A DNA stretch of 64,000 bases, from the IMG/VR virus record IMGVR_UViG_3300045961_000282, positions 1 through 64,000 of that record. One strand, written 5' to 3'. Of the stretch, positions 38,912-63,741 are shown piece after piece. A model generated the notes under the pieces. That model was not told where the DNA came from and made no database searches. It was given only the letters and a program-made list of their open reading frames with translations. Made by a program: the position numbers and the translations under genes. How positions within the stretch are numbered: the first letter of the stretch is position 1; every line of letters starts with the position of its first letter.

Positions 38912-40015
38912 TTATAGTCGTTGGGCAGTAAGTGCGAGCGTAACGTTTTGCGTTGATGCAGAGTTATGGACCACGTATGGGACGATCTCGATCTGGCTGG
39001 TGTTGGACGCCCTGAATATCCATGACAACTCACCACCGGACATTCCGGTGCTACCGTTGATAGAGGAGAATTGAACTCTATCCGCAAGACCCATGGCGAG
39101 TCGAATGCCGATATTCATGTTGCCACCAAAAATTGCATGATAGACAACTAGAAAAACATCACCTGCTGAATGCCCATTGATTCGCAGGCTCGTTGAGGTC
39201 CATGTTGCCCAAATCGGTTGGGTTCCAGAAGGAGTCATCGCCGATGACAGGCCCCGCCACCCGGTTCCTGACGCAGTGCTGTTGTTTACCCACGCGTAAG
39301 CATGCTCAGAATCGGCTCGTCGATCAACGTAGCCTTTCGTGGCGATGCCCAGCGCAGCCGTTGGGTTGCCTGACACCGTCGCTAGCCCTGTTGCGCGATC
39401 GAAGAGCATGGCCGAGCCGAGCGGTGACCCATCGTCGGCGTACCGATTGACCGTCAAACTGCTCCCTGCGTTACCGCCACTCTCGACGTCAGGGTTTTTT
39501 GCGATCAGCCACCGAGTTTTTCCTGCCCTACTTCCAACCAGCATCCCGGCGTGGCCATCCGAGTAGGTGCGCAAATATGCCGTTGTGTCCTTGGAGAGGA
39601 TGAGATCACCGCTCATTGTGTCGCCAGTCTTGGCGACTTTTTGATCGGCATACTGCTTGGTAGCGGCAGCGTTTTGGTCCTGCGGATGATCGACGATCAA
39701 TTGCTCCAATTTTCCATCAAGTTTGTTTATCAATCGAACCTGTCCGGTCACCTCGGTCAGCCGGGCACTCTCCCATTCCGGACCAAGCCAATCTGTAAAT
39801 CCGATGTTCCCAGACATCATGTCGCCGGACTTCTGGACGAACGACGACACATCAGGAGCAGGCCCTTCCGGGCCCGACGGCCCTTCAGGCCCTTGGGCTC
39901 CGTCGGCTCCCGCAGGGCCTTGGGGGCCGGGGGGCCCTTGCGGTCCGCGGGGTCCCGCGATGTTCAGGGACTTCCACTCACCGGTATTTGGGTCGCGGTA
40001 CTTGATCGCGCCCAT
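38912..40015 (-). CDS. collagen-like fibre protein with YRD tag
   Basis: MGAIKYRDP; GXY repeats; GD.MSG and AATK.Y repeats. Confidence 0.85.
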   Translation of the reverse strand: MGAIKYRDPNTGEWKSLNIAGPRGPQGPPGPQGPAGADGAQGPEGPSGPEGPAPDVSSFVQKSGDMMSGNIGFTDWLGPEWESARLTEVTGQVRLINKLDGKLEQLIVDHPQDQNAAATKQYADQKVAKTGDTMSGDLILSKDTTAYLRTYSDGHAGMLVGSRAGKTRWLIAKNPDVESGGNAGSSLTVNRYADDGSPLGSAMLFDRATGLATVSGNPTAALGIATKGYVDRRADSEHAYAWVNNSTASGTGWRGLSSAMTPSGTQPIWATWTSTSLRINGHSAGDVFLVVYHAIFGGNMNIGIRLAMGLADRVQFSSINGSTGMSGGELSWIFRASNTSQIEIVPYVVHNSASTQNVTLALTAQRL

Positions 40016-40067
40016 CAGGCAGCCCTTTCCGAAATGAAATGCAGGTCATGAGAAATCATGCTATTTC

Positions 40068-40868
40068 TCAAATCTTTTTCATGATGTAGGTCAGGGCGTA
40101 ATAAGGTGGGCGGTTTTCGTGCGCCTGCCCGCCTCCCTCGGCTGTGATGCTGTGGCTGTGAACGTTGCTCTGACTCATCCAGCCCGTGGAGAAGTCGTGC
40201 TGGTGATCGGTGTTGACCACGCCTGCGTTCAGGTCATTCCAGTAGCCGCCCGGCGGCGCATCGGTATGTCGCTTGAGGACGTTGCCATCCCACCCACCCG
40301 CCTCTGGCGGCCCGCCCGTCCCGGTCCGCAGGCCAGTGCCGTGTCCGTGGGCGGCGTTGTAGCCGTCTGCCTGATGTCCCGTGCGCCCCGAGTGCGTATG
40401 GTTCACATCGACCTGTGACGTGCTGCCCGTGTGGTTGTGCCACGGCACGTGCTCGATCCCAAGGGTCACCGCCGCCGCGCCACCCGTCGCGCCGTTGGCG
40501 TAGCCCGCACCGGCCCCGACGACGAACCTGTCCCGCAGGTCCGGGGTCGTTGCGGACCCGATGATGGCCTGCAGTTCGGTCGACCCGTGGGCGCTGCCGT
40601 CGCACAGGTGCCACCCCTCCGGAGCGACCGACCCGCCGTAGGCGATCACCGCGCCGATCGGCATGGCGGCATTGAGTTCGGCCCTCTGCACGAACGTCGA
40701 CGTGTCCGGTGCGGGACCCTCGGGCCCCTGCGGACCATCGGCCCCTGCGGGCCCTGCGGGCCCTTCGGGGCCCTGTGGGCCGGGGGGCCCCTGAGGGCCA
40801 CGGGGGCCTGCCGTGTTCAGGGACCGCCACTCACCCGTGTCCGCGTCGCGGTACTTGATGACAGCCAT
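40068..40868 (-). CDS. collagen-like fibre protein with tail-collar domain and YRD tag
   Basis: MAVIKYRD; P.G.VI.Y..P.GWHLCDG..PDLRDRF; H.H repeats; PPYYAL.YIMK. Confidence 0.9.
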   Translation of the reverse strand: MAVIKYRDADTGEWRSLNTAGPRGPQGPPGPQGPEGPAGPAGADGPQGPEGPAPDTSTFVQRAELNAAMPIGAVIAYGGSVAPEGWHLCDGSAHGSTELQAIIGSATTPDLRDRFVVGAGAGYANGATGGAAAVTLGIEHVPWHNHTGSTSQVDVNHTHSGRTGHQADGYNAAHGHGTGLRTGTGGPPEAGGWDGNVLKRHTDAPPGGYWNDLNAGVVNTDHQHDFSTGWMSQSNVHSHSITAEGGGQAHENRPPYYALTYIMKKI

Positions 40869-41335: not shown

Positions 41336-41627
41336 TTATCGACCTGCGGCCGAAGTATCGACCGATGATCGTCGACAGCAGCGACAGCACGCCGCCGGTC
41401 AGGGTCAGGATCAGGTTCTGGGCGTTGCTGGACAGATCAAGTCCGGGCTCACCGGAGGAAGAATCGATCACGATGCCGATGCCCACCATCATGAAGAACA
41501 CCAGAACCGCTCCGGCGGCGATCTGAAGGGCGATCAGGAACCCCGCGTCGAGGTCGCCGCTCCACGCCTTGCCTATCCCACCCTGCTCTTTCTGGGGAGA
41601 GTTGGAGGGGCTAGTCACATCGCTCAT
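41325..41627 (-). CDS. 2-TM membrane protein (holin candidate)
   Basis: Two TM helices ending GRYFG, like the neighbour's GSYFG. Confidence 0.6.
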   Translation of the reverse strand: MSDVTSPSNSPQKEQGGIGKAWSGDLDAGFLIALQIAAGAVLVFFMMVGIGIVIDSSSGEPGLDLSSNAQNLILTLTGGVLSLLSTIIGRYFGRRSINGR

Positions 41628-41869
41628 GGCGCTCCTTCCGCGCTTCTCATCTCAGCGATCAGATGTTCCAGAGATTCGATTCTGGTCAGGATGTCGGTCA
41701 TGGTTGCGTCATCCCGCGAAGGCAAGCGCGTCGAGGTGTTGACCCATAACTTGACGTCAGGATCGGTGGGCTCAGTGGGAGAGACCTCGATCTCATCGAG
41801 GGGGTCCCGGGGAACGACCAGTGGAACCCACTTGCCGCCAGCGAGATCGCGGTAGTACAGGATGGCCAC
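41624..41869 (-). CDS. small YRD-tag adaptor protein
   Basis: MAILYYRD..KW.PL; EVSPTEPTDP..LWV. Confidence 0.75.
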   Translation of the reverse strand: MAILYYRDLAGGKWVPLVVPRDPLDEIEVSPTEPTDPDVKLWVNTSTRLPSRDDATMTDILTRIESLEHLIAEMRSAEGAP

Positions 41870-41871
41870 AG

Positions 41872-42636
41872 TCAGGCCCCCTTGTAGATTATGTGGTTCA
41901 GCGCGAAGTAGGGCGGCATGATCGAGAAGGGCGCGCTTCCGCCGTCAGAAGGAATGGGGTGCGCATGCGGGCCACTGCCGACCTGCCGCAGCATGCTCGG
42001 ATCCCCCTCCAGCAGGGCGGGGTCGATCTGCCACCTGTCCGCGTCGCCCGTGGCCCCCTCGCCCGCGGGCCCCGTCGCGCCACCGTGGTTGTGGCGGGGC
42101 ATGTTGCTCACGGTCAGCGCGACCCGCTCGGCCCCGCCCTTGCTTCCGTGGGGGTATCCGTTGCCTGAGACCAAGATGAACCCGCTGCGCAGGTCGGGGG
42201 TGCGGTCGCTGCCCAGCACCTCTTCGAGAGCCGGAGAGCCGTGCACCGTCCCGTCACACAGGTGCCACCGCGGCGGCGCCAGTCGGCCCCCGAATGGGAC
42301 GATCACTCCGATCGGAACCGAGCCCTGTGAGTCGACGCGCTCGTCGACGTACTCCTTGGTCGCCGCATGGAACGGCTCGTGTGGCGGGCCCACCAGCGAC
42401 AATGGACCCAGCATCCGGTCACCGTCGGCATTGACGAACCGCTTGTCCAAGAAGGTCCAGCCGTCGACCTCGTCTGCGGTGCGAACGACATCATCGGACG
42501 TGTCGATCCAGATCTCGTAGCCGCCCTCCTTGATCGGCGGCTGCGCACCGCCGATCTGCACCTCTTCGGCCAAATCCGTCGTGGCAAACGGACGCCACTC
42601 ATCATCCGCGGGGTCGCGGTAGTACAAAGTGGGCAC
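41872..42636 (-). CDS. tail-collar fibre protein with YRD tag
   Basis: PTLYYRDP..EW; AATKEYVD; WHLCDG..PDLR; PPYFAL.HI. Confidence 0.85.
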   Translation of the reverse strand: MPTLYYRDPADDEWRPFATTDLAEEVQIGGAQPPIKEGGYEIWIDTSDDVVRTADEVDGWTFLDKRFVNADGDRMLGPLSLVGPPHEPFHAATKEYVDERVDSQGSVPIGVIVPFGGRLAPPRWHLCDGTVHGSPALEEVLGSDRTPDLRSGFILVSGNGYPHGSKGGAERVALTVSNMPRHNHGGATGPAGEGATGDADRWQIDPALLEGDPSMLRQVGSGPHAHPIPSDGGSAPFSIMPPYFALNHIIYKGA

Positions 42637-42715
42637 GGTCGGCCTCCAGCGGGGTGCGGCGCAGCACGAATGTACCAACGGGGCCCCGTGCGGGCGGGGC
42701 GTTTCTGCAACGGTC

Positions 42716-42730
42716 GTCAAGCAATGTCAG
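42716..42730. promoter_or_regulatory. GTCAAGC-nn-TGTCAR motif in divergent promoter region
   Basis: Matches 27004-27018 and 30241-30255. Confidence 0.55.
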
Positions 42731-42831
42731 ACCCCCCGCCTAGGGTCGCAGTGTGGGTTCGGAACCGGGCCCGGCACCGCGATCCTGATAGGGTTACGGC
42801 AGCATCACCAACGACACAAGGAAGGTCTCCC

Positions 42832-43551
42832 ATGGCATCCACCCCCTACGACGACGACTACCAGTCCGTCGCCGAGCGCATCGCGATCTTCCGCACCAAG
42901 CACCCGGATGGGAGCCTGTGCGCCCTTGACCCGGCCAAGCCGTTCGAGATCGTCCACGTCGGCGACAAGGTTTTCATCGCCGTCACCGCGGCGGCCTATC
43001 GCAGTCCCGAGGATCCGGCCCCCGGCGTCGGGCTGGCGTGGCAGGTGTTCCCCGGCACCGACGAGTACACCCGCGACAACGAGTTGATGATCGCCCAGAC
43101 CTCGGCGTGGGGCCGGGCCATCGTCGCCGCGCTGGCCGCCGATGCCAAGAAGATCGCCACCAAGGACGAGGTCCGCGCGGCGCAGTCCAACCGAGCCCCT
43201 GCCAACCCGGCCCCGAGCGCCGCGAGCGCCAACGGCACGGCGGTCAAGCAGGAGGAGCCCCCGCAGTCCACCGACCCCACGGCGGAGTTGTACAACTCGG
43301 CTGTGGTCGATGAGGCGATGCGCCTGATGAAGGCGCCCACCACCACCTATGACGAACTGCGCGACGTCTGGCAGATGCTCTCGCAGGCGCGACTGGGCGC
43401 CCGGCGCATCGACCCGCCGCCCGGCATGGATGCCGATGGCGATGGCAAGGTCCCGATCCTCTCGGCGGTCGCCTTCGTGGGCAAGCAGCGCAAGGAGAAC
43501 GCCCCCGCCGCGCAGACCGAACTGGCGGTCAACGAGAAGGGTGCGAAGTGA
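42832..43551 (+). CDS. putative single-strand annealing protein (Rad52/Sak-like)
   Basis: YQSVAERI..FR.KHP.G, A.TSAWGRA motifs; coupled to exonuclease. Confidence 0.65.
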   Translation: MASTPYDDDYQSVAERIAIFRTKHPDGSLCALDPAKPFEIVHVGDKVFIAVTAAAYRSPEDPAPGVGLAWQVFPGTDEYTRDNELMIAQTSAWGRAIVAALAADAKKIATKDEVRAAQSNRAPANPAPSAASANGTAVKQEEPPQSTDPTAELYNSAVVDEAMRLMKAPTTTYDELRDVWQMLSQARLGARRIDPPPGMDADGDGKVPILSAVAFVGKQRKENAPAAQTELAVNEKGAK

Positions 43552-45608
43552 CCGACGACCTGACCACTGACGCCGCGACCGACATCGTCCTGCCCGACGT
43601 CCACGAGGCAGCCACGGGCGAGATCCCGCACACCGTCGTGCACTTCAATGCCATGGTCGGCGCGGCGTTCCGGGCGGCCAACGACAAGCGGGCGCGCAGC
43701 CAGCAGCGAGCGCTGGGCATGAGCGAGTTGGGCGGCTGCCGCCGACAGGCCGGGTTCAAGGTCACCAACACCCCGCAGTCCAACCCACAGGGGGACCGCA
43801 CTGACATCTTCGCCGACTCTCGCGAAGCCATGATCGGTTCAATGATCCACGACACGATCCTGCCGCAGATCGCCGAGATGAGCATGACCGCCGAGATCGA
43901 GAAGCCGGTGGTGCTCAAGTTCGAGGGACTGCCCGAAGTCCCCGGATCAGTCGATATGGTTGATGGGGATATCGTGCTGGATCTCAAGTGCCTGTCCCCA
44001 GAAACCCCGATCCTGATGGCGGATGGGCGCGCGAAAAGGGCCGATGAAATCAAGGTCGACGACCTTGTGGTGGTCTACGACCAGATCCACGACAAGTTGG
44101 TCCACGGCACCATCGCGGCAGTCGAGGAGAACGGCGACCAGCCGACCGTCGAGGTGATCACCGAGAGCGGGCGGCGGCTCAAGGTCACCGACGAGCACCC
44201 GGTCTGGGTCAAGGACGATCCCGAGTCGCTGGGCCGCTGGGTGGATGCCTTCGACCTCGAGGCCGGAATGCTGGCCACGCTGGCCCTGTCCGCGCCCGTG
44301 GAGACCCCGCAGCCGTTGCCGGAGATCGGCCCCGATGACCCATGGCTGCTGGGGCTGCTGGCGGCGGTTCAGTTCACCCCCGATGACCTCATGGTCAAGG
44401 TCTCCGACGAGACGGTGCGGGCCGTGGCAATGACGTCCATCGCGCTGATGGAGCCCGGCTACGCCAACGAACTGTGGCGGCGCAACTCGTGGATCGGGCT
44501 GGGCGACCCGCAGATCCCCGACGACGTGATCCTGTCCGGCCCGCGGGCGTGGCAGGAGTGGCTGTCGGGCTTCTCGGCCATGGCCCTGTCGTTCGAGGAG
44601 CGCACGTCGTGGAAGACCCCCAACCGGGCCTTCGCCGAACAGATGGCCGCGATGCTGTGCGGGCTGGGCATCAAGGCCCACATCGGCATGGACGACTACG
44701 GCAAGCCCGTGGTGTCGGTGCGCGACGACTACGGGGTCAAGCGGCTGTCCAGCGCCCTGTGGCTGCGCGGCAACAAGAGCGAGCGGCTGCGGGCCATCGC
44801 CGAGCGGCTCGACGGCACCCGCCCGGAGCACTACGAACTGGACAGGATCACCGCCGTCATCCGCGACAGCGAGCCGACCCGCACGTTGGCCATCGAGGTT
44901 GCCGAGTTCCACACGTTCGTCACCGGGGGTCTGGTCACCCACAACACCGTCGGGTCCAACTCAGCGACCTACTACCAGACCCACGGAGCCAGCCGTCGGC
45001 ACCTGTTCCAGACGCACGGGTACGCCCAAGCCCTGATCAACGCAGGGCACGACATCCGCCACGTCGCGCTGGCCTACATCGACCGGTCCAACGGGCAGGT
45101 CGTGCACATGCACTACCAGCCCTTCGACCCCGGCATCGTGATGGACATCGAGCAGTGGTGGCTGGAGGTCAACTCGGCCACCGACCCGATGGACCTTCCG
45201 CGCGACGAGAAGGGGCCCGGGATCTCGCGGCAGTGCGACTGGTGCCCGTGGCTCAACCTGTGCTGGGGCCCCGATGCCAAGCCCGGCGAGATCGGCCCAC
45301 AGAAGGTCATCGTCCACGAGGCCAGTGACGAGAACGCCGAGGTTGAGCGCTGGCTGCGCGAGTACCACGCCGCGTCGAAGGCTGAGAAGGAGGCGACCGA
45401 GAACAAGAAAATGGCCCGCGCCGTTCTGGCCGACGCCCCTGCGGGTCAGTATGGTTCGTTCGTCCTCGGCTGGAGCCCGGACGGGTCCTACGAAACCCTC
45501 GATGCCGATGCTGCCGAGAAGGCCCTGACCGCCGCCGGGCTGCCGGTGCCCAAGGTCACCCGGACCCGGCAGGGCGCGATTCGGGTGAAGCCCAGCAAGA
45601 AGGTCTGA
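43548..45608 (+). CDS. Cas4/RecB-like PD-(D/E)xK exonuclease containing an intein
   Basis: MSELGGCRR, G..IH, GSVD, DLK, Q.HGY, CDWCPW..C (4-Cys). Confidence 0.85.
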   Translation: MTDDLTTDAATDIVLPDVHEAATGEIPHTVVHFNAMVGAAFRAANDKRARSQQRALGMSELGGCRRQAGFKVTNTPQSNPQGDRTDIFADSREAMIGSMIHDTILPQIAEMSMTAEIEKPVVLKFEGLPEVPGSVDMVDGDIVLDLKCLSPETPILMADGRAKRADEIKVDDLVVVYDQIHDKLVHGTIAAVEENGDQPTVEVITESGRRLKVTDEHPVWVKDDPESLGRWVDAFDLEAGMLATLALSAPVETPQPLPEIGPDDPWLLGLLAAVQFTPDDLMVKVSDETVRAVAMTSIALMEPGYANELWRRNSWIGLGDPQIPDDVILSGPRAWQEWLSGFSAMALSFEERTSWKTPNRAFAEQMAAMLCGLGIKAHIGMDDYGKPVVSVRDDYGVKRLSSALWLRGNKSERLRAIAERLDGTRPEHYELDRITAVIRDSEPTRTLAIEVAEFHTFVTGGLVTHNTVGSNSATYYQTHGASRRHLFQTHGYAQALINAGHDIRHVALAYIDRSNGQVVHMHYQPFDPGIVMDIEQWWLEVNSATDPMDLPRDEKGPGISRQCDWCPWLNLCWGPDAKPGEIGPQKVIVHEASDENAEVERWLREYHAASKAEKEATENKKMARAVLADAPAGQYGSFVLGWSPDGSYETLDADAAEKALTAAGLPVPKVTRTRQGAIRVKPSKKV
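43989..44945 (+). mobile_element. intein (319 aa) with degenerate LAGLIDADG-type core
   Basis: Starts CLSPETPILMADG, block B TDEHP, ends VTHN followed by Thr; inserted right after DLK. Confidence 0.9.
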
Positions 45609-45619
45609 CCCACATCCCA

Positions 45620-45655
45620 GAGGGCCCCGAAAGCATCGACGCTTCCGGGGCCCTC
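45620..45655 (+). terminator. hairpin terminator
   Basis: GAGGGCCCCG...CGGGGCCCTC after stop. Confidence 0.7.
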
Positions 45656-45743
45656 GGCGTTCGTGGGCACCTTCGGCGGTGCTAGGTTTGAAAGGTCCCG
45701 TTGGGGACACGGACGCCCCCATGGGGGCACTAGGGAGAAGAAG

Positions 45744-46889
45744 ATGAAGCGCACAATCGCAGCCGCTGCAGCGGCTGCGTTGGCGGTCATCGGACTCGCC
45801 TCCCCGGCCACGGCCGCCGAGACAAAGTTCGATCTGATCGCCAACGGTGGCACTACCGCCACATCGCAGGACATCGGTGATGTGTTCGTCACCGATGACG
45901 GGGCCACGCTCGCAGTCCGCGTTGTCCTCAACGGAGAACTCGACGCCAGCAACAACGTGCCCACCCTTGTCTACGGCATCAGCGCCGAAGCGAACTGCAC
46001 CATTGCTGAGTTCCCGCTGTCCAAGGGCAACCCGGTCCCCGGGCAGTTCGACTACCAGCAGGCGTACCCCGATGGGGCGGCCGGACCGTTCGAGTTCACC
46101 CTGACCCGTCCGGCCTGCGATGACCCGCTGGTGGCCGTGCATGCCGACGTCAAGGAACTCGGAAACATTGCGGGGTTCAACTCAGTGTTCCCCGCCTCAG
46201 TGTCGTTCCGCCTCGTGCAGGACACCGGCGCTGACCCAGATGCGTCCTACTTCGACACCACGTTCACGGCGACGTCGGGCCTGCTCGCGGGCGAGACGTT
46301 CAACGGGTGGTGCGTCGACGTTGGGCACAGCGTCTCGATGAACACGACATACCCGGCCACGGCGTACTCGATCCTCGAACTGCCCACCGGGCCGATCGGC
46401 AACATCGACAAGCCGCAGAACCTGCCCGGCGTGATGTGGCTGCTCAACAACTACCGCCCCGGTGATGTGGTGACCGCTGACATCACGCCGAACGACGGGA
46501 TCGCCAACCCGGTGACCCGAACGCTCACCTCGGGCGACATCCAGCGGGCCATCTGGTACATCGTGGACAACACCCAGTCCACATCCGGCCTCGGGGCATA
46601 CAGCGATCCGTGGGCCAAGTACCTAGCGGACCTCGGACTGGCGAACGTCGCCTACGCGCCCGCGAGCCTGTGCGGTCTGGTCGTTCCGATCATCCTCGTG
46701 ACGAACAACAACGGCGTGCAGACGACAATCGCGCAGACCACGCTGGTCGAACTGGGCGTCCCCTGTGCGGACATCACTGCCACGGCGATGGCGATGAACA
46801 CCGCTGTGACGGTCACCGAGAAGGGATCGGTCCGCTACGGCGAACAGTTCCCGGGATCCAATTGGTTCTCCTACGTGATCGCCCTGTAG
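45744..46889 (+). CDS. secreted protein with thioester-domain (TED)-like motifs
   Basis: Signal peptide; GWCVD and IQRAIW motifs; distal VQ. Confidence 0.6.
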   Translation: MKRTIAAAAAAALAVIGLASPATAAETKFDLIANGGTTATSQDIGDVFVTDDGATLAVRVVLNGELDASNNVPTLVYGISAEANCTIAEFPLSKGNPVPGQFDYQQAYPDGAAGPFEFTLTRPACDDPLVAVHADVKELGNIAGFNSVFPASVSFRLVQDTGADPDASYFDTTFTATSGLLAGETFNGWCVDVGHSVSMNTTYPATAYSILELPTGPIGNIDKPQNLPGVMWLLNNYRPGDVVTADITPNDGIANPVTRTLTSGDIQRAIWYIVDNTQSTSGLGAYSDPWAKYLADLGLANVAYAPASLCGLVVPIILVTNNNGVQTTIAQTTLVELGVPCADITATAMAMNTAVTVTEKGSVRYGEQFPGSNWFSYVIAL

Positions 46890-49198: not shown

Positions 49199-49207
49199 GG
49201 CCGTCCC

Positions 49208-55799: not shown

Positions 55800-55801
55800 T
55801 A

Positions 55802-56767
55802 CTACCTCCACGGGATGATGACGAGTGAGTAGCCATCAATCCACGCATCCCTCGTGGATTGGGCCCACAGGGCGAAGGCCCCTTGCCTGAAAAGTACGGC
55901 CATGCTGACGCCATAGGTATCGCCGCCGACCGCCGTGGCCATGACGTTTGCCCACTGCCAGCCATACGGCAGAGCGCTATCGGCAACCGTGTTCCGCTGC
56001 CCCGCGTAGATGCGCTGCCGGTGTGCAACAGTGACCCCGTAGACCAGAGGAACGGTTGCATTGGGACCCGCCGGTCCCTGAGCGCCCTGCGGTCCCTGAT
56101 CACCCCTCACTCCCTTGTCGCCCTGCGGGCCGGGAGACCCTGCAGCGGGCACGAAGTCCTGATACGAAACACCCGACAGGCCCGCGGTGAGGAAGGGCAC
56201 TGAGTCCCCGACGGCGGGACGCACGCGGGCCGAGCCCACCGACAGGGCCCAGTTGTAGGTCGAGAAGACCAGCGTGGCATCTCCGGGATGCTGGACTGGC
56301 TGCGCCTGATCCCACGGCGTGTAGAGGCCACCGTCGTGCTGATGTCCCAGAACCACGTTGTAGGGCTCATCGGCATGCTGAACAACTCCGATGGCCACGG
56401 ACTTCTCTGCGTTCGCCTTCGCCGCATAGCCGATCGCGACCGAGTCGTCGCGCATGTCTGGCCATTGCTCAACACGGTTGCCGAAGGTGGCGTCGATATA
56501 GGCGCCGCCCTGACCGATCAGGGTGCCGCGGCTGCGCGTATCGACCTTGAGGTAGTCGGTGATCGAAGCGCCAGTTCCATCTGCAGAGACGTGCACCTCG
56601 GCGCTGCGGTGATCTGAGTTGATCCCCTCAGTGATGGGCTCCTCGGAGCGGATCGCGAACTGCAGTTTGGAGCCCTGATTCTCAACGGTGAATGGCGGGA
56701 TGTTTGGGTCCTCAGAATCAAAAGTGATTCCGTCTTCTACCGCTTCCAAATCATGCAGATGCTTCAT
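55802..56767 (-). CDS. fibre protein with YadA-like head motifs and short collagen
   Basis: SVAIG x2; GXY. Confidence 0.75.
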   Translation of the reverse strand: MKHLHDLEAVEDGITFDSEDPNIPPFTVENQGSKLQFAIRSEEPITEGINSDHRSAEVHVSADGTGASITDYLKVDTRSRGTLIGQGGAYIDATFGNRVEQWPDMRDDSVAIGYAAKANAEKSVAIGVVQHADEPYNVVLGHQHDGGLYTPWDQAQPVQHPGDATLVFSTYNWALSVGSARVRPAVGDSVPFLTAGLSGVSYQDFVPAAGSPGPQGDKGVRGDQGPQGAQGPAGPNATVPLVYGVTVAHRQRIYAGQRNTVADSALPYGWQWANVMATAVGGDTYGVSMAVLFRQGAFALWAQSTRDAWIDGYSLVIIPWR

Positions 56768-57735
56768 AGCCAGATCACCACATAGAAGAGTCGAAAGTAT
56801 TCTCCGTAAGGACCATAGTTATGCACCTGCACCTGCAGGTCGATCCCGCTGGTGATGGCAAAAACCGCAAGACAGTTTCTGTCCACTTCGATTGGCATCG
56901 CCGAAGCGTACAAAAGATTCGCCCCATAGCCAGATGCATTTGGAATATTGATGGTGAGATACTCGTTTGACTTCACATAGAAGTTGTCGGTGCCGTTGAT
57001 TCCCGACGGGGCGACCATTCTGGCGCGGATGTTTCCGTAGTGACTGACTCCCGCAGTTCCTTGCGGGCCCTGCGGGCCCCTGTCGCCCGTGGGCCCCTTG
57101 GGTCCCGTGTCGCCCTTGACGCCGACTGTGCCGGGGTATACCGGAGGAGAGAACCACCCCAGCGAGCCATCTGGCAGGGCGCCGAAGACCTGCCCGGGTG
57201 AACCATATCCAGAGTTGCCCACGCGGAACTTGTAGGCCGTGTCTGCGCGACCGAACGTGTAGTCAGTGACGTGCGGGTACCACCAGTACCCGTACTTGAC
57301 ATGAACTGCCCCGCGGTCCTCTGCTCCCGCTCCGGCCACGAATGAGGGTGACCCGGTCGCGCGCGCCCCGTAGCCGATGGCTTGGGCACGCATGGCCAGA
57401 TCTCCCGCGCTCTCATTGTTACCTTGGGGCGGGGGCGGGACCCATGAATCTGGCACGCCGACGTAGGCGTCCTTGCCGATGGCGATGGCGTGGTAGCCGC
57501 GCAACACGTGGGCGGAGGTGTCTGCTCCGTGGCCCACCACGGTCTGCACGGGTGGCAGGCCACCTCGATCGGAGCGCGAGTTGATCAACAGCGACCCACG
57601 CCCGTCCGGAACGCGCCAGTAGATCGTCGAGCGCCCATCCGTGAACTTGGAGAACACCGACGGAGTTGCCCCGGTGAGTTTCGCAGGCTCGGTGAAGGCG
57701 AACCACGCCTGCCTGATCTTGGTGGCGATCTTCAT
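56764..57735 (-). CDS. fibre protein with YadA-like motifs and collagen
   Basis: AIAIG/AQAIG; GXY. Confidence 0.75.
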   Translation of the reverse strand: MKIATKIRQAWFAFTEPAKLTGATPSVFSKFTDGRSTIYWRVPDGRGSLLINSRSDRGGLPPVQTVVGHGADTSAHVLRGYHAIAIGKDAYVGVPDSWVPPPPQGNNESAGDLAMRAQAIGYGARATGSPSFVAGAGAEDRGAVHVKYGYWWYPHVTDYTFGRADTAYKFRVGNSGYGSPGQVFGALPDGSLGWFSPPVYPGTVGVKGDTGPKGPTGDRGPQGPQGTAGVSHYGNIRARMVAPSGINGTDNFYVKSNEYLTINIPNASGYGANLLYASAMPIEVDRNCLAVFAITSGIDLQVQVHNYGPYGEYFRLFYVVIWL

Positions 57736-57736
57736 C

Positions 57737-59227
57737 TCAACCCACCGCGATCCATTGAACGGTGTAGTTGGATGCGGCGTAGGGAGAGGAGTTGTAGACC
57801 ATGATCTCCGCCCAGTTCCCCGATTTCTGCCGGATGCTCACCGGTAGCGGTGGGCCAGACTTCGGGCTCAGCGTGAGGCCCGCGATGTCCCACGGCGCTG
57901 TGATCCCGAGGTAGGCCGCCGCGCCCTTGGCGATGGAGGGGAACGTCACCTGCCCCCCCGCGATGCGCGGGTGCAGATCTGCCCCCGCGGGCCCTTGCGG
58001 GCCCTGTATCCCGACCGCCCCCTTGTCGCCCGGGGGCCCAGTCGGCCCCTTGGGTGCGATACCCGCCACGCCGATGCCGGTGCAGACGATGCTCTCCATC
58101 CGCAGGATCGGCTCGCCTGACCCCTGACAGTCGAACAGAATCTCGAACACCGCCCACAATGGCCCCAATGCGGCGGCCTCGGCAGCAAGGGGCCCCGAGG
58201 TCGCTCCGATCCCGGGGGTCGCCGTCACGGAGGCGTACACGTCGCGACTCGAACCGCCGCGGGCGTTGATGTAGTTCTGGTCGATGACCGTGGTGGCCGC
58301 CCACGTGGTTCCCTGATCGAACGACACCCGCAGCAGGACGCGCGCCCCGTTGAGCAACTGGGCGCCCGCCTTTATCTGGATCGTCATCTGGCAGGGCACG
58401 TTTGCACGCGCCAGACCGAACTTCCATGCGCGGGCGTAGTTCCCGATCGGCCGCGGCAGGGTGCCGACAAAACCGTCGCCACCTTCGGTGTTGTAGTCGA
58501 TGACGTTGCCATCCATGCCGTTGAGGCGACAGCCCGTCGGTTCCTTGTTTGTATGTGGCGCCGGAGCGCAGATGCCAGTCGGGTCAGTGGGTCGAACAGT
58601 CCACTCGGCCCAGAACCACGACCACGTTGGGGAGAACCGCCCCGGCGACTTGGGTCCTGCCCCTCGGTCGTTGAACGCCGGGTCGTAGAACGGTGTCACA
58701 CCCTTGGTGGCCATCCAGTCGCCCTGCCCACGGGTGTACTGCCCGCCGGGAAACCGCCATTCATTGACGCTGCTGGCATTGACAGCGAGCGCCTGCCCGG
58801 GCTGCGGGAGGTAGGCCTTTGTGGGCCATTTGTAGGGCTTGGTGTTGGTGCCCAGTTGCACCACGGGCCCCGTCAGCCCTGCATCGGTGGCCTGATACCC
58901 GATGGCGATGCTGTCCTCGTTGTCAGTGCGCGCCTCTGCGCCGACGGCCACGGAGTTGCGGCCCCGGGCGCGCGAACCATACCCGATCGCAACAGCGCCG
59001 GTGGTGGCCTCGGTGCCGTTGAGCAACGTCGCCCCGGCGCCCAGTTGCTCCGGGGTCTGCGTGGTCATCGCCAGCGCCCCGCCGTCATTCAGCGCGATCT
59101 TGAGTCCGCCGATGTCGGCGACCTGCGAGATGCTGTCGTCGGAAGCGGTGGCTTCAAGGGTCAGCGCAGGGCCCGGCCCCGGAGCGATCATCCGCCCGAA
59201 GTGCTCGATCCGCTGACGCCATTTCAC
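57737..59227 (-). CDS. fibre protein with YadA-like head repeats, collagen and lectin-like tip
   Basis: AVAIG/SVAVG/SIAIG at 14-aa spacing; GXY; VQWIAVG end; GTG start 59227. Confidence 0.8.
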   Translation of the reverse strand: MKWRQRIEHFGRMIAPGPGPALTLEATASDDSISQVADIGGLKIALNDGGALAMTTQTPEQLGAGATLLNGTEATTGAVAIGYGSRARGRNSVAVGAEARTDNEDSIAIGYQATDAGLTGPVVQLGTNTKPYKWPTKAYLPQPGQALAVNASSVNEWRFPGGQYTRGQGDWMATKGVTPFYDPAFNDRGAGPKSPGRFSPTWSWFWAEWTVRPTDPTGICAPAPHTNKEPTGCRLNGMDGNVIDYNTEGGDGFVGTLPRPIGNYARAWKFGLARANVPCQMTIQIKAGAQLLNGARVLLRVSFDQGTTWAATTVIDQNYINARGGSSRDVYASVTATPGIGATSGPLAAEAAALGPLWAVFEILFDCQGSGEPILRMESIVCTGIGVAGIAPKGPTGPPGDKGAVGIQGPQGPAGADLHPRIAGGQVTFPSIAKGAAAYLGITAPWDIAGLTLSPKSGPPLPVSIRQKSGNWAEIMVYNSSPYAASNYTVQWIAVG

Positions 59228-59487
59228 TTGAAGACCACCCAGTTCACACTGATGTCGCGCGTGGCCCGAAGGGTCAGGGTGTTGGCATCCTTCACAGCCA
59301 CGTCGAGCATGACCATCTCGTTGCCCTCGTAGAAGGTTGCGCTGACGCCGGTGTCGCCGAGGTTGTGGGCGACATCCAGCGGGGTGTGGGCAACCAGCGT
59401 CGCACTGCCGATGGCCTTGGACTTGCTTGACCCCTGAACTGGGATCCACTCATTGAGCGTCGGGTCGCGGTAGTACAGAACTGCCAT
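59224..59487 (-). CDS. small YRD-tag protein with HNLG beta domain
   Basis: MAVLYYRDP..EWIP; V.HNLG..D.NTLTL. Confidence 0.8.
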   Translation of the reverse strand: MAVLYYRDPTLNEWIPVQGSSKSKAIGSATLVAHTPLDVAHNLGDTGVSATFYEGNEMVMLDVAVKDANTLTLRATRDISVNWVVFK

Positions 59488-60424: not shown

Positions 60425-61413
60425 AGGTCACCGCCAATCGGAAATATGCATTCCAAGTTGAACCACATTCCGTTCGGAATTGGATGCCCGGGCTTCACGT
60501 ACAAAGACTGAACCTGATGGTGATAGGTGGCGTGCGCACCACAGTCGTAGCGCGCCGCCATTCCGGTCCAGAGCGACGTCACATTCTCTCCGACGAGGCC
60601 GAAGGACATGGATAGTGTCGTCGGCTTCGGCAACACTCCGGGGTCCATGGACGACACGATGATCACCTCGCCGTAGTCGAGGGCCTTCAATGCCTTTGCC
60701 AACCCCCGGTACTCGACGATCTTCGCCGTAGGGGAGTACCGCCACATCACGCGGTGATGGTCGCCCCCGTCGTAGTGGGTCGCGTTGCCGTTGAACCATG
60801 CTTCGGGGCCGGTCCCGCTCGGAGAGGCCTTGACCTCCATCCATGGCGACCACGTGTCGACCTGACTCGGCACAGATTCGGGCAGCCAGCGGGAGCCGTC
60901 CCAGAACCGGGCATCCTCCCACTGGGAGCCGTCCCACCCCTTGATCTCTGGCTTCCACTGGGTGCCATCCCATGCAACCGGGACCGGCGCATCCCACAGG
61001 GTCAGGTTGCGCACCCAGATCCGTTGCCCCGCTGGGGCGACGTCGTAGAGCATGTCGACCCAGAGCAGCGGATTGCGGTCATGGACCTTCGCGGCCCCCT
61101 GTGCAACCCGCCACGTCGAGTCGCCGATGAGCATTCCATATCCGCTGTAGTTGGTATGCCCACCTGCCATTCCGCCGATGTAACCGTTCACTTCCGCGCG
61201 GTACTCGCAGGTGATCCAGTAGATCTGGTGGCTGATCGGATCGATGGCCGCCGGGGCCTGAAAGAGGCTGTCCCGGTGGCTGTGGTACGTGATCTCGGTG
61301 CACCACTGGGAATCGATCTGCTTGGCCTCAAAGGTGACGGCTCCGTCGGCCGCTATGCCCGACTTCTTCCAACCCTGAGTCAGTGCATGGTTGGCTCGGG
61401 CGATCGCCCTCAC
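60421..61413 (-). CDS. fibre-associated protein with WDG repeats
   Basis: WDG.QW x3; C-terminal VEYRGL domain like 59579-60424. Confidence 0.75.
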   Translation of the reverse strand: MRAIARANHALTQGWKKSGIAADGAVTFEAKQIDSQWCTEITYHSHRDSLFQAPAAIDPISHQIYWITCEYRAEVNGYIGGMAGGHTNYSGYGMLIGDSTWRVAQGAAKVHDRNPLLWVDMLYDVAPAGQRIWVRNLTLWDAPVPVAWDGTQWKPEIKGWDGSQWEDARFWDGSRWLPESVPSQVDTWSPWMEVKASPSGTGPEAWFNGNATHYDGGDHHRVMWRYSPTAKIVEYRGLAKALKALDYGEVIIVSSMDPGVLPKPTTLSMSFGLVGENVTSLWTGMAARYDCGAHATYHHQVQSLYVKPGHPIPNGMWFNLECIFPIGGDL

Positions 61414-61820
61414 AGCGGGACCCAGATCTGCCCGACCGGCGGGTCGGCCGGGGCACTGTGGCTGACGATCACGAAGTTCTGCAACTGCGCCTTCGTTGCG
61501 TACTGCGGGTGCGGATCGGCGGCCTGCTCATGCTCGGCGATGCGCTGCTGCGCCGAGCCGCGCGGGTCGTAGAGCGAGTCGGCCTCGGCGTGGGTGAGGT
61601 ACTTCGAGGTCTCGACGCTGGCGTCGGGATCCAGCCACAGGTCCAAGCCCTCGCGCGGCGCGGGCTCGCCCTCTTGGATCAGGATCTCCTCGGGCACGAA
61701 GATGTTGCCATCCGTGCCGATGACCGCATTGTTGCCCGGGTCGATCGACGGCTCGGGCTTGGGCTGGACCAGCGGGACGAACTCGCCAGTTGCTGGGTCC
61801 TTGTACTTCAGGGTGGGCAT
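61410..61820 (-). CDS. YKD-tag adaptor protein
   Basis: MPTLKYKDP; DPHPQY; C-terminal SAP..PPVGQIWV. Confidence 0.8.
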   Translation of the reverse strand: MPTLKYKDPATGEFVPLVQPKPEPSIDPGNNAVIGTDGNIFVPEEILIQEGEPAPREGLDLWLDPDASVETSKYLTHAEADSLYDPRGSAQQRIAEHEQAADPHPQYATKAQLQNFVIVSHSAPADPPVGQIWVPL

Positions 61821-61914
61821 CGGTGGCTCCCATCGATCGTCGCGCGCGCCCGCGGCTACCTGTGCGTCAGGGTAGTGGTCGACCCTTGCTCAGCAAGGGC
61901 GATTTCGCACCCAG

Positions 61915-63741
61915 TCACGCGGTGCGCCATGACGCGTTGAGGACGATCCATGCGTCCGTGTTGATCGTGACGCTCGGGTTGCACATCATCTGAACCGTGC
62001 CGCTGGTCTCGAACGAAACCCTTCCCATCGCCCATGCTTCGGGATCGGCCCGGTTGGTCAATACCAGCGCGATCTGGTTCGCCAACTCCGCCGGGCGGTA
62101 CCCGACAGGAACGGTACACAGGACATTGTTGACGTTCCTACCTGTCGTCAACGCCGCGCCCGTCCTACGGAACAGGGCGGAGAAGATGACGATCTGCCCA
62201 ACCCGAGTTACCTTCGCTGCCGCATAGGCGCCCCAGTCTGGGGCATACGCACACTCGACCGTGCCCTTGCCTGCCATTTCGTCGGCGTACGCCTTGGTGG
62301 CCGCATCCTCAGCCACCGAGGGGGTCGCCACTTGGAGTTGGACGAGGTTGCCAAACCCTCCATCCTTGACCTGCATCCGGTTGTTCGACCCCAGACCAAT
62401 GGTTTGGAAGGACACGCCCGGCTTGTGGAACCGAATCCTCGGGTCGGCCGCGTTCTGCACCTCGAAGCCCAGTTGGGCAGTGTTGGTCAACTGCCCAGAC
62501 ATCGTGTCGCCAGTTTCGTTGACCTTACCTGCCAGTGCGGTGGAAACCGCATTCTGACTGGGCGCCTGATCGGTGATGGAGCCCGGAGACATGGAATTGA
62601 TAACTCTGCCGTTGGCATAGGCCTTTGAGGCGTTGACACTCATTGCCCTGTCGGTCTCAGATCCTGCCGAAGTGTTCAGGATTTTTCCGTCGACATATCC
62701 CTTAGTGGCAATTCCAAGATTCGTGGTTGGACTTCCGACAATTTCAATAAGACCAGTTTGATTGCTGATTCTCAAAGCATCGGTGGCCGACGCATAGTCC
62801 TTGCGCCACAGCCGGAACCGCACGTCGCCAGCATCTGCGCCGAGCGAGACTACCTGCGCCACCCACCCCCATCCATCGCGCGCCAACGTCAGGGCCGAAT
62901 CGCCAGTGGGGGACGCGACGGCAAGGGCGTTGGCGTGGCCGCTGGCATCTGCGGTTACTTCGAGTCGAGGGGTTCTCAAAGTTCCGGTCATGCTGTCGCC
63001 ATCGACGTTGACGTACCGCAGGTCGGCCTGCTCCAAGGTCAGACCGCCGCCCGAGTCATCGTCTGTGTCGACCCAGATCTCGATGTTCGGGTCGACAGGC
63101 TGTTCTGCGTCGACCCAGACCTCTTTGACTCCGCCGCCGCTGGATGCCGTGACCGGGATCCACATGTCGTGGTCGGTGGAGTAGACGTGGGTCTTCGCGT
63201 CGCCGTGGGTGACATTGAATACCCGGATGCCGAAGACCTCGCAGGTTGCGCCGCCAAGCAACTCGATGCCGAACTCCTGCGGGGCCTTGTGCATAGAGGT
63301 CAGGGATATGGTTTGTTCCTCGTCCTGAACCTCGGCGAGTTTCCCGCTGACGACGAAACTCTGGGAGACGCGCACCTCGCCAGTCACCTTGCGTACGTCG
63401 AACTCGACGTGGATCGCGTCGCCGTCCTGCCAGCCAGAGGCGTCGTACTGCGCCCGCGCAAGGCCCTTGCTCGCAGGGCCAGTCAGGCGCACCACTCCGC
63501 CGCCCAGAGTCGTCAGAGCGACAGAGTCATAGCCGAATCCAAAGTTCAGTCTCCACTGGGTGGCGTTGGCGCCCCAGCCTGCAGTGATCAGGTTCGGCGC
63601 GATGGGTTCGATCCACACCATGCCCGCGGCGTAGAACTCCGGCGCGCTGGTGCCCACGTAGGGCTCGGCTCCGGCATCCCCCGTCGACACGAGGGGAATC
63701 CACTGGTCCGTGACGGGATCGCGGTACCACAGTTTCGCCAT
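61915..63741 (-). CDS. long fibre protein with YRD tag
   Basis: MAKLWYRDP..QWIPL; GD.MTG; ATK.YVD repeats; P.GYRP tip domain. Confidence 0.85.
   Translation of the reverse strand: MAKLWYRDPVTDQWIPLVSTGDAGAEPYVGTSAPEFYAAGMVWIEPIAPNLITAGWGANATQWRLNFGFGYDSVALTTLGGGVVRLTGPASKGLARAQYDASGWQDGDAIHVEFDVRKVTGEVRVSQSFVVSGKLAEVQDEEQTISLTSMHKAPQEFGIELLGGATCEVFGIRVFNVTHGDAKTHVYSTDHDMWIPVTASSGGGVKEVWVDAEQPVDPNIEIWVDTDDDSGGGLTLEQADLRYVNVDGDSMTGTLRTPRLEVTADASGHANALAVASPTGDSALTLARDGWGWVAQVVSLGADAGDVRFRLWRKDYASATDALRISNQTGLIEIVGSPTTNLGIATKGYVDGKILNTSAGSETDRAMSVNASKAYANGRVINSMSPGSITDQAPSQNAVSTALAGKVNETGDTMSGQLTNTAQLGFEVQNAADPRIRFHKPGVSFQTIGLGSNNRMQVKDGGFGNLVQLQVATPSVAEDAATKAYADEMAGKGTVECAYAPDWGAYAAAKVTRVGQIVIFSALFRRTGAALTTGRNVNNVLCTVPVGYRPAELANQIALVLTNRADPEAWAMGRVSFETSGTVQMMCNPSVTINTDAWIVLNASWRTA

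What the first reader, a model, noticed from the sequence alone, without database searches (positions are those of the whole stretch)
38912..63741. Twelve virion-appendage genes share an N-terminal tag: possible plug-in fibre kit
Seen starts: MGAIKYRDPNTGEWKSL (40015), MAVIKYRDADTGEWRSL (40868), MAILYYRDLAGGKWVPL (41869), MPTLYYRDPADDEWRPF (42636), MAVLKIRNSQGEWEIV (50451), [17 protein letters not shown] (51566), [17 protein letters not shown] (52090), [17 protein letters not shown] (52233), MGVLKVWDEVSQQYVPI (55439), MAVLYYRDPTLNEWIPV (59487), MPTLKYKDPATGEFVPL (61820), MAKLWYRDPVTDQWIPL (63741). The tag is followed by collagen, collar, lectin-like or linker domains. Nine genes in the region carry collagen repeats. 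Inference: a beta-hairpin docking tag lets many different fibres attach to a common socket, giving a branched or heterogeneous receptor-binding apparatus far larger than the usual 1-3 fibres.
Basis: partly seen in the sequence, partly recalled or inferred. Interest (0 to 1): 0.75.

Follow-up and report, generated by a model that had tools for sequence, protein, structure and literature searches.

The report
Shared hairpin tag on phage fibres
A 206-kb high-GC phage carries a 34-kb block of tail-fibre-like genes, 14 of which begin with the same 17-residue beta-hairpin motif; this motif is widespread in phage fibres but absent from domain catalogues, and it most likely forms the virion-proximal joint of interchangeable fibres.

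Summary
All 12 tags sit at start codons on the minus strand. Two more lie just outside the window (66928, 67578), and no strong copy occurs elsewhere in the 206,257-bp virus record.

The genes lie directly downstream of a siphovirus tail module (tape measure, Dit, Tal-like). They encode collagen stalks, collar domains and a head domain modelled as H-type-lectin-like, so this is an unusually large fibre set.

The tag is not private to this phage. A profile search of 1.84 billion proteins found about 90 other cluster representatives that start with it, mostly followed by collagen, in low-GC and high-GC phages. Other contigs carry one to three copies. Pfam and NCBIfam have no model for it.

It looks like the hairpin part of a "strand + hairpin" unit. 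In the CBA120 TSP3 crystal structure that unit forms a trimeric beta-prism II. In some phages the unit is split exactly between two adjacent genes.

Best reading: a trimeric N-terminal hairpin cap that anchors each fibre, possibly by completing a partner's strand. Docking and a single common socket are unproven. A purely foldon-like trimerisation role is the main rival. I rate it a new variant of the known "conserved N-terminal docking peptide" principle.

The parts
38912..40015 (-). Tagged fibre gene 1 (367 aa): hairpin tag, collagen run at residues 21-53, C-terminal domain
40068..40868 (-). Tagged fibre gene 2 (266 aa): tag, collagen, Phage Tail Collar domain
   Evidence: (PF07484, 28.9 bits against a cut-off of 24)
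41624..41869 (-). Tagged small protein 3 (81 aa, GTG start): tag, 'P..P..LWVNTS' strand motif, helix
41872..42636 (-). Tagged fibre gene 4 (254 aa, GTG start): tag, strand motif 'EIWIDTS', collar-like domain
   Evidence: (PF07484, 22.1 bits, below the cut-off)
49939..50451 (-). Tagged mini-fibre 5 (170 aa): tag, collagen run 17-85, beta-sandwich head
   Evidence: head resembles H-type lectins and the R-pyocin fibre foot
51027..51566 (-). Tagged mini-fibre 6 (179 aa): tag, collagen, head
51563..52090 (-). Tagged mini-fibre 7 (175 aa): tag, collagen, head. Its start overlaps the stop of the 48-aa gene (ATGA).
52087..52233 (-). Tagged 48-aa protein 8: only the hairpin plus 'VAVG..P.DP..LIWIDE' strands. 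A 62-aa homologue (P0085) has a collagen spacer inserted between the two parts.
53916..55439 (-). Tagged fibre 9 (507 aa): tag, short collagen run, two internal strand motifs, Phage_tail_C end
   Evidence: PF24243, 28 bits against a cut-off of 23.7
59224..59487 (-). Tagged small protein 10 (87 aa): tag plus a small beta domain
   Evidence: same start in the database gene call
61410..61820 (-). Tagged protein 11 (136 aa): tag, internal strand motif, C-terminus ending in the strand motif '..GQIWVPL'
61915..63741 (-). Tagged fibre 12 (608 aa): tag, two strand motifs, fibre repeats, C-terminal domain
55802..59191 (-). Three untagged fibre genes (55802-56767, 56764-57735, 57737-59191). Two carry YadA-head-like repeats (55802-56767 and 57737-59191). 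All three have a collagen run and the same type of head as the mini-fibres.
47519..49576 (-). Untagged fibre-module genes. 49208-49576 (122 aa) has a full 'strand + hairpin' N-terminus and a Phage_tail_C end. 47519-49198 (559 aa) has Big_3_5 Ig repeats and a DNRLRE domain.
52364..53911 (-). Untagged 515-aa fn3-containing protein that follows a Phage_tail_C-ended gene. The same gene order and a homologous C-terminus occur in contig L052.
59579..61413 (-). Two untagged genes of unknown family (281 and 330 aa) within the fibre block
63823..64000 (-). Low end (C-terminal part) of a 253-aa gene (63823-64584) with a jelly-roll-like body and C-terminal 'xWNGTRWVPL' hairpin repeats. It precedes tagged gene 12 and belongs to a duplicated cassette that continues outside the window.
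   Evidence: (phrog_2448)
42367..46889 (+). Plus-strand island that interrupts the fibre block and is not part of the fibre set. It holds an intein-carrying nuclease-like gene (43548-45608) and a secreted protein gene (45663-46889).

Best explanation
The window is the start of a 206-kb, 65.7% GC siphovirus-like phage genome, probably of an actinobacterium. Downstream of its tail-tip genes lies a roughly 34-kb block of about 30 fibre-module genes.

Fourteen of these genes encode trimeric fibre or adaptor subunits whose first 17 residues (consensus M-x-[VT]-L-K-Y-R-D-P-x-T-G-E-W-x-P-L) form a beta-hairpin. Three hairpins at the N-terminal end of each trimer make a small cap. That end is the virion-proximal end, because the lectin-like and collar heads are C-terminal. 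The cap is the attachment joint of the fibre.

The hairpin is the last two strands of a widespread three-stranded 'strand + hairpin' unit of phage fibres. A likely partner is therefore an exposed 'P..P..G.LW.DT' strand on another fibre-module or baseplate protein, which would complete the sheet.

What is shown: the motif, its position, its spread among phages, the fibre nature of the proteins, and the predicted hairpin.

What is inferred: trimer cap, attachment role, and identity of the partner.
For: Motif and clustering. Protein-level conservation.

Fibre nature and location next to tape measure, Dit and Tal-like genes.

Architecture: in the 170-179-aa proteins the tag is the only element N-terminal to the collagen stalk, and the head is C-terminal and lectin-like. 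If these proteins are mounted on the virion by their N-terminus, as fibres usually are (general knowledge of tail fibres and tailspikes), only the tag can do it.

Spread: 192 profile hits at E <= 1e-3 among 1.84 billion cluster representatives. About 88 foreign proteins carry the tag at residue 1, and 60 of those are followed directly by collagen. It occurs in contigs of 28-69% GC, including SU10-like podovirus contigs, with 1-3 copies each.

Hairpin structure: AlphaFold places strands at residues 5-8 and 13-16 (pLDDT about 70 in the 48-aa protein; low confidence). The tag also resembles Kelch and WD40 blade hairpins and the foldon.

'Strand + hairpin' unit: it occurs in cis in P0195, P0201, P0203 and at three N-termini in this locus (alignment A3). 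That profile picks the C-termini of CBA120 TSP3 and of 7chu (hhalign probability 77.5%). TSP3 residues 598-627 form a three-stranded sheet that builds a trimeric beta-prism II (PMC6517402).

Split units: an upstream gene ends exactly with the strand and the next gene starts with the hairpin in L032, L008 and in this phage at 52233/52090.

Precedents for N-terminal docking: short conserved peptides in K1-5, SP6 and Klebsiella phages (PMC6872550; abstract of PMC13352976), and N-terminal hairpin arms clamped by Dit in mycobacteriophage Mysterious (PMC13252515).
Against: There is no experimental or multimer-model evidence that any tagged protein is in the virion or binds a partner.

No T4gp10-like or other recognised branching domain was found.

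In the solved structures the full unit is a C-terminal trimer cap, not a dock.

The matches to TSP3 (E = 0.79) and to the foldon (probability 51% over 10 columns) are weak.

In this genome only 1 of 14 tagged genes directly follows a gene ending in the strand motif. About 7 of 34 locus genes end that way, so gene adjacency gives no enrichment here.

The tag sub-classes differ, so 'one socket' is doubtful.

The conservation of the tag across very different phages fits a self-contained folding role as well as a docking role.
Confidence: 0.45

Rival explanations
1. Foldon-like folding nucleus only. The hairpin trimerises and sets the register of the adjacent collagen or beta-structured stalk, as the T4 fibritin foldon or the TSP3 D4 prism do, and plays no part in attachment. 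Fibres would be anchored by other contacts or by partner proteins.
For: - About two thirds of foreign tagged proteins have collagen directly after the tag. The search profile included collagen columns, which inflates this figure.
- Collagen helices need a neighbouring trimerisation domain (general knowledge; collagen-foldon fusions appear).
- The tag resembles the foldon hairpin and the trimer-forming TSP3 D4 unit (PMC6517402).
- The motif is the same in phages with very different tails.
Against: - The tag also heads proteins with no stalk at all (48, 81, 87 and 136 aa).
- The C-terminal heads resemble trimeric lectins and could trimerise the stalk themselves.
- The strict position at residue 1 and the small second residue (A, G, S or P in all 14) are not needed for a folding nucleus.
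- Nothing else in the 170-aa fibres could anchor them.
Confidence: 0.27
2. Paralogy without a specific role. The shared N-terminus is what remains of tandem duplication and recombination among fibre genes, kept only because it is a convenient exchange point.
For: - Clear recent paralogue pairs or triplets exist: 40015/40868/67578, 55439/66928 and 51566/52090.
- The block contains a duplicated cassette.
Against: - Between sub-classes only the tag is alignable, while the rest of the proteins is unrelated.
- The DNA of the tags differs at synonymous sites, so it is a poor recombination substrate.
- The same peptide heads unrelated proteins in phages of 28-69% GC, which requires purifying selection on the peptide.
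Confidence: 0.08
3. Recognition tag for an assembly factor. The hairpin would be bound by a fibre chaperone or a modifying enzyme rather than by the virion.
For: - A conserved small jelly-roll protein with C-terminal hairpin repeats sits directly upstream of tagged genes, twice in this phage and once in an unrelated podovirus-like contig.
- Many fibres need dedicated chaperones (for example PMC9608196).
Against: - Most tagged genes here and elsewhere have no such neighbour.
- Fibre chaperones usually act on C-terminal domains (general knowledge).
Confidence: 0.08

Closest known systems
Branched receptor-binding-protein systems with a short conserved N-terminal docking peptide (K1-5/K1E/SP6; Klebsiella KP32, KP34, Menlow and PhiK64-1 groups; PMC6872550; abstract of PMC13352976)
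   Same: Many clustered RBP genes. Secondary RBPs share a short (7 residues and upward) conserved N-terminal peptide followed by unrelated distal domains. Plug-in logic.
   Different: In those systems the peptide is specific to each phage group and docks on a T4gp10-like branching domain. Here no such domain was found. The peptide is a 17-residue hairpin shared across very different phages. The distal parts are collagen stalks with lectin-like or collar heads, not beta-helix depolymerases. The host is probably Gram-positive and the tail is siphovirus-type.
D4 subdomain of CBA120 tailspike TSP3 (PDB 5w6f/6nw9; PMC6517402) and the C-terminus of 7chu
   Same: The sequence pattern 'P..P....Y(Y/F)DTT....W....G.W' matches the 'strand + hairpin' unit of this locus. 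In the crystal it is a three-stranded sheet that forms a trimeric beta-prism II.
   Different: There the unit is complete, C-terminal and a distal cap. Here the tag is only the hairpin part and sits at the extreme N-terminus. The statistical support is weak (E = 0.79; hhalign 77.5%).
T4 fibritin foldon (PDB 1rfo)
   Same: A roughly 12-residue beta-hairpin with a '..GEW..L' second strand that trimerises a fibre and can nucleate collagen helices.
   Different: The foldon is C-terminal, has an extra N-terminal extended segment and a two-residue turn. Only 10 columns align (probability 51%). No homology is claimed.
Baseplate accessory proteins of mycobacteriophage Mysterious (gp35/36/37, gp40; PMC13252515)
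   Same: An actinobacteriophage siphovirus in which N-terminal beta-hairpin arms or beta-beta-alpha segments of trimeric fibre-like proteins are clamped by the distal tail protein.
   Different: No sequence similarity was tested or seen. That phage has a few accessory proteins, not 14 with one motif.
Collectins, C1q and the Bacillus BclA exosporium protein (general knowledge)
   Same: A short N-terminal targeting or bundling segment, a collagen stalk and a trimeric globular sugar-binding head.
   Different: These are cellular proteins with unrelated N-terminal segments and heads. This is an analogy of design only.
Klebsiella jumbo phages PhiK64-1 and phiKp24 (PMC6872550; 10.1101/2022.03.15.484430)
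   Same: Jumbo genome with more than ten fibre or spike genes forming a heterogeneous apparatus.
   Different: Those are myoviruses of a Gram-negative host with depolymerase spikes. They have no common hairpin tag.

Membership tests
Branched RBP system with conserved N-terminal docking peptide | Several RBP or fibre genes clustered next to the tail genes | tested here: met
   About 30 fibre-module genes lie between 38912 and 72955, downstream of Dit and a Tal-like gene
Branched RBP system with conserved N-terminal docking peptide | A short conserved peptide at the N-terminus of otherwise unrelated RBPs | tested here: met
   14 tags with HMM E < 1e-5, all at residue 1
Branched RBP system with conserved N-terminal docking peptide | An anchor RBP or adaptor with a T4gp10-like branching domain | tested here: not met
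   No such hit in Pfam, PHROG or NCBIfam scans of 35 locus and tail-tip proteins. Remote homology by structure was not tested.
Branched RBP system with conserved N-terminal docking peptide | Physical docking of the peptide on the partner | not testable with these tools
   No multimer modelling or experiment was available
Collagen triple-helix repeat proteins (PF01391) | G-x-y repeats scoring above the Pfam gathering cut-off | tested here: met
   49939-50451 (39.8 bits), 51027-51566 (49.2), 51563-52090 (37.6) and 64588-65994 (34.3), against a cut-off of 27.2. The other eight genes have shorter G-x-y runs below the cut-off.
Phage Tail Collar domain (PF07484) | Score above the gathering cut-off of 24 bits | tested here: met
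   40068-40868 scores 28.9 bits. 41872-42636 scores only 22.1 bits, but its database relatives carry PF07484.
Phage_tail_C (PF24243) | C-terminal motif scoring above 23.7 bits | tested here: met
   53916-55439 scores 28.0 bits and 49208-49576 scores 33.6 bits
H-type lectin fold | Six-stranded beta-sandwich superposable on SLL-2 or Helix pomatia agglutinin | tested here: inconclusive
   Model of 49939-50451: head pLDDT 66-82. Foldseek 3wmp E = 5e-4, TM 0.62 by target. Also hits the R-pyocin fibre foot and the LKA1 gp49 C-terminus. Sugar-binding residues and the trimer were not tested.
TSP3-D4-like trimeric beta-prism II unit | Sequence match of the 'strand + hairpin' unit to the solved unit | tested here: inconclusive
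   hmmsearch E = 0.79 over 36 residues. hhalign probability 77.5% over 30 columns. The tag alone gives 10%.
T4 fibritin foldon | C-terminal 27-residue unit: extended segment plus hairpin | tested here: not met
   Only the second strand aligns (10 columns, probability 51%). The position is N-terminal, not C-terminal.
Kelch / WD40 propeller repeats | Tandem four-stranded blades | tested here: not met
   These are look-alike hairpins only. The tag is a single copy of two strands. Propeller proteins appear among the profile hits as multi-stretch matches.

The most novel reading that the evidence does not exclude
The hairpin tag and the 'P..P..G.LW.DT' strand (including Phage_tail_C-type ends) are the two halves of a split mini beta-prism. 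A trimer ending in the strand and a trimer starting with the hairpin would snap together by strand complementation. Phages of many lineages would then build chains and branches of fibres from a universal connector. This jumbo phage would have expanded the system to 14 plugs and about a dozen orphan strands. The 48-aa protein (hairpin + strand only) would be a bare extension piece.
Probability: 0.25. Interest if true: 0.8.

Novelty: new variant of a known kind. Interest (0 to 1): 0.58.

Why it matters
If the hairpin is the joint by which collagen-stalked and other fibres are mounted, it gives a simple, sequence-recognisable rule for finding virion-attached adhesins in uncultured phages. Most of these proteins are at present 'hypothetical'.

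It would also be a compact natural connector for studying how siphoviruses of Gram-positive hosts assemble heterogeneous adhesion devices.

The 14-fold expansion in one genome is a natural experiment. The same plug sits on very different distal domains, which makes the docking-versus-folding question directly testable.

Tried and rejected
- **Close relatives.** Near-DNA search of phage records found nothing relevant. A search for close relatives of the Tal-like protein in IMG/VR found none. Orthologue-based conservation could therefore not be measured.
- **DNA pattern searches.** A strict pattern for the tag found nothing outside this genome. A looser one found 43 contigs, of which about 14 carry true N-terminal tags. 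The roughly 200-kb low-GC contigs among them were chance or internal matches.
- **tblastn in cultured phage records.** Queries with a 136-aa tagged protein and with a 54-aa foreign tagged protein found no tag.
- **Solved structures.** A search with the tag profile returned only Kelch or WD40-type look-alikes.
- **Fold search.** The 48-aa model gave nothing meaningful.
- **Mtd_N (PF18454).** Considered because some collar-domain relatives carry it. No tagged protein hits it.
- **Regulatory or recombination-site reading.** Rejected, because the upstream DNA is not conserved and the codons vary.
- **Gene adjacency.** 'Strand-ended gene followed by tagged gene' was checked as evidence for trans pairing. 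It holds in L008, L032, perhaps L030, and once in this genome. Within fibre modules it is not clearly above expectation.

Full report
**Context.** The window is bases 1-64000 of a single 206,257-bp IMG/VR virus record, judged 99% complete and 65.7% G+C. No near-identical phage record exists and no close relative of its Tal-like protein is in IMG/VR. Just outside the window on the minus strand lie:
- a 2140-aa tape-measure-sized gene (80529-86951);
- a distal tail protein (78727-80532; phrog_33 and PF22768 SPP1_Dit);
- a Tal-like minor tail protein (77246-78766; phrog_1885).

The Tal-like protein is 26-29% identical to minor tail proteins of Streptomyces and Microbacterium siphoviruses. The phage is therefore most likely a jumbo siphovirus of an actinobacterium. 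That is an inference from similarity and G+C content.

**The observation.** Every one of the 12 quoted N-termini is present at a start codon on the minus strand. Two of these (41869, 42636) are GTG starts. Two more copies lie at 66928 and 67578. A profile of the tag finds these 14 and nothing else convincing in the genome.

Shuffled genomes give about 0.3 matches to a loose start-anchored pattern, against 15 observed (14 tags plus one chance match at 130214). Upstream DNA is not conserved apart from Shine-Dalgarno-like purines, and codons inside the tags differ synonymously. What is conserved is therefore the peptide.

The second residue is always A, G, S or P. The tags fall into sub-classes:
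- IKYRD..T.EWRSLN (three copies);
- LKVWDE.S.QYVPIVG (two copies);
- LRYR.S..GA (two copies);
- L(Y/W)YRD....(W/F).P (five copies);
- two singles.

**What the genes are.** PHROG profiles place the tagged proteins in tail-fibre families. Eight of the 14 have a collagen run directly after the tag.

Two tagged proteins end in a Tail Collar or collar-like domain, and one ends in a Phage_tail_C motif. The 170-aa protein 49939-50451 was modelled with its paralogues. The tag came out as a hairpin at low confidence, the collagen part was disordered in the monomer as expected, and the last 85 residues formed a beta-sandwich with pLDDT 66-82. That head superposes on H-type lectins (SLL-2, Helix pomatia agglutinin; TM 0.62 by target, E = 5e-4) and on the distal 'foot' of R-pyocin fibres and of the LKA1 and phi297 tailspikes.

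Three untagged neighbours have a collagen run and the same kind of head, and two of them also carry YadA-head-like repeats. Further untagged members have fn3, Ig-like (Big_3_5) and DNRLRE domains.

The block runs from about 38.9 kb to 72.9 kb. It is interrupted by a plus-strand island (42367-46889) and contains two membrane-protein genes. An M23 peptidase gene and a beta-helix protein gene lie just below it, at 36.5-38.6 kb.

**The tag is widespread.** A profile of the 14 N-termini was searched against 1.84 billion cluster representatives and gave 192 hits at E <= 1e-3. One class is large WD40 or Kelch-like repeat proteins with many internal matches. These are look-alike hairpins, as the PDB search also shows.

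The other class is about 95 proteins matched at residues 1-31. Seven are this phage's own, and about 88 are foreign, from both lysine-rich and arginine-rich proteomes. Sixty of the 88 continue directly into collagen, but the profile included some collagen columns, so this share is inflated.

All named members are 'hypothetical protein'. Pfam and NCBIfam have no model covering the tag.

Contexts recovered for 20-odd contigs show fibre positions in siphovirus-like and SU10-like podovirus contigs. In one case the position is between connector and tail genes. Each contig carries one to three tags. Fourteen copies in one genome is therefore exceptional among what could be examined. The sample is small and biased towards one DNA pattern.

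**What the hairpin belongs to.** In several foreign proteins (P0195, P0201, P0203/P0221) a second, internal copy of the hairpin follows directly after a 'P..P..LW.DT' strand. Three untagged proteins of this locus (68295-69941, 64588-65994, 49208-49576) start with that complete 'strand + hairpin' unit.

A profile of the unit picks, at weak E-values, the C-terminal 30-37 residues of two solved trimeric spikes: CBA120 TSP3 and 7chu (hhalign probability 77.5%). In TSP3 these residues form a three-stranded antiparallel sheet. The three subunits arrange their sheets as a beta-prism II whose core is lined by Asn, Trp and Pro (PMC6517402). The tag corresponds to the last two strands of that sheet. It also resembles the hairpin of the T4 foldon over its second strand (the foldon sequence was verified).

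Alignment of 16 N-termini shows the layout hairpin, then a G-x-y spacer of zero to about ten triplets, then 'EV.VG...P.....LWVDTD'. In many proteins, therefore, the hairpin and a strand motif sit at opposite ends of a variable rod. The 48-aa protein consists of just these two elements and is modelled as four short strands at pLDDT about 70.

**Split units.** Three cases were found:
- In contig L032 the gene upstream of the tagged gene ends '...DLWVDTSS' and the tagged gene starts at an ATGA overlap.
- In L008 the upstream gene ends '...PTNPTVLIWVHI'.
- In this phage the 48-aa gene ends '...[11 protein letters not shown]' and overlaps the start of tagged gene 51563-52090.

Read across the stop, these junctions reproduce the contiguous unit seen elsewhere. 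By the gene-fusion ('Rosetta stone') argument, this suggests that a C-terminal strand and an N-terminal hairpin can pair in trans.

Seven proteins of the locus end in such a strand, and about seven more strands are internal without a following hairpin. A cassette of a strand-ended fibre, a jelly-roll protein ending in 'xWNGTRWVPL' hairpin repeats, and then tagged gene(s) occurs twice in this genome. It occurs in the same order in a podovirus-like contig, with detectable homology of the middle protein.

Against over-reading this: only one of the 14 tagged genes here directly follows a strand-ended gene, which is not more than the composition of the locus predicts.

**Mechanism.** The heads are C-terminal and lectin-like or collar-like. 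In phage fibres the N-terminus is normally the particle-proximal end (general knowledge). In the mini-fibres the tag is the only thing N-terminal to the collagen.

I therefore favour an attachment role for a trimeric cluster of hairpins (confidence 0.45). The partner is unidentified. A strand-complementation partner is the most specific idea (probability about 0.25).

Precedents exist for short conserved N-terminal docking peptides in multi-RBP phages (PMC6872550; abstract of PMC13352976). Precedents also exist for N-terminal hairpin arms held by Dit in an actinobacteriophage (PMC13252515).

The main rival is a pure trimerisation or registration role like the foldon or TSP3 D4 (0.27). This fits the collagen association and the cross-lineage conservation, but not the stalk-less tagged proteins. 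Simple paralogy (0.08) and a chaperone-recognition tag (0.08) are less likely.

**Comparison and novelty.** The plug-in principle is known, so this is not categorically new. It differs from the known systems in four ways:
- the nature of the peptide, a 17-residue hairpin shared across unrelated phages rather than a lineage-specific peptide;
- the absence of a T4gp10-like socket;
- the collagen-plus-lectin design of many fibres;
- the scale, with 14 copies in a siphovirus-type genome.

'Beta-hairpin' and 'many fibres' hold. 'Docking' and 'common socket' remain hypotheses.

Noticed in passing
window 42367-46889 (+): A plus-strand island splits the minus-strand fibre block. It holds a 686-aa nuclease-like protein with an intein (PF14890, below the gathering cut-off; Hint-like insert at about residues 156-466) and a 408-aa secreted protein with no family.
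   Followed up: partly
window 36464-38626 and 40868-41627 (-): Lysis-like genes border and sit inside the fibre block: an M23 peptidase with a PG_binding_1 domain, a right-handed beta-helix protein, and two small membrane proteins (one with a long acidic E/P-rich tail) lying between tagged genes.
   Followed up: partly
window, 3 nt upstream of tag starts (e.g. 40015, 40868, 55439, 59487, 63741): Nine of the 14 tagged genes have CTG directly before the ATG, giving ..CTGATG with a TGA stop overlapping the start. The same context ('GGL|M', 'GPL|M' when read in frame) occurs at tagged genes of the foreign contigs L008, L053 and L057. This may reflect termination-reinitiation coupling.
   Followed up: no
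window 49208-49576; G000 64588-65994 and 68295-69941: A second recurrent N-terminus, 'MAKAH.FVVP.GL...P.SP.VG.TYFDTT...TWDG..WV', contains the complete 'strand + hairpin' unit.
   Followed up: partly
window 52364-53911 and 47519-49198; L052 7969-9639: A third recurrent junction: a gene ending in Phage_tail_C is followed by a gene starting 'MPLL...' or 'MVLVN...' with a '..VY.G..VW' hairpin-like stretch. The junction is conserved between this phage and a 68% GC metagenomic contig.
   Followed up: partly
G000 61410-69941 (partly outside the window): A duplicated three-part cassette: a strand-ended fibre, a jelly-roll protein with C-terminal 'xWNGTRWVPL' repeats (phrog_2448), then tagged gene(s). 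The same order is seen in the SU10-like podovirus contig L006.
   Followed up: partly
window 55802-56767 and 57737-59191 (-): YadA_head repeats (trimeric autotransporter adhesin head motif) in two phage fibre proteins, each combined with a collagen run and a lectin-like head. A third neighbour (56764-57735) has a similar layout but no YadA_head hit.
   Followed up: no
L055 5248-6378: In a 39% GC contig the tagged collagen protein lies between head-tail connector and tail genes, a neck- or head-fibre position. Its translation with table 11 contains internal stops, which hints at a recoded stop codon.
   Followed up: no
window 1106-1237: The only near-DNA match of the window to a cultured phage: 82.6% identity over 132 bp to a methyltransferase gene of Mycobacterium phage Parliament.
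   Followed up: no
window 33810-36477: A 600-aa AAA_25 protein with a zinc-finger-like N-terminus (primase/helicase-like), and a plus-strand endonuclease VII gene, lie just upstream of the lysis and fibre region.
   Followed up: no
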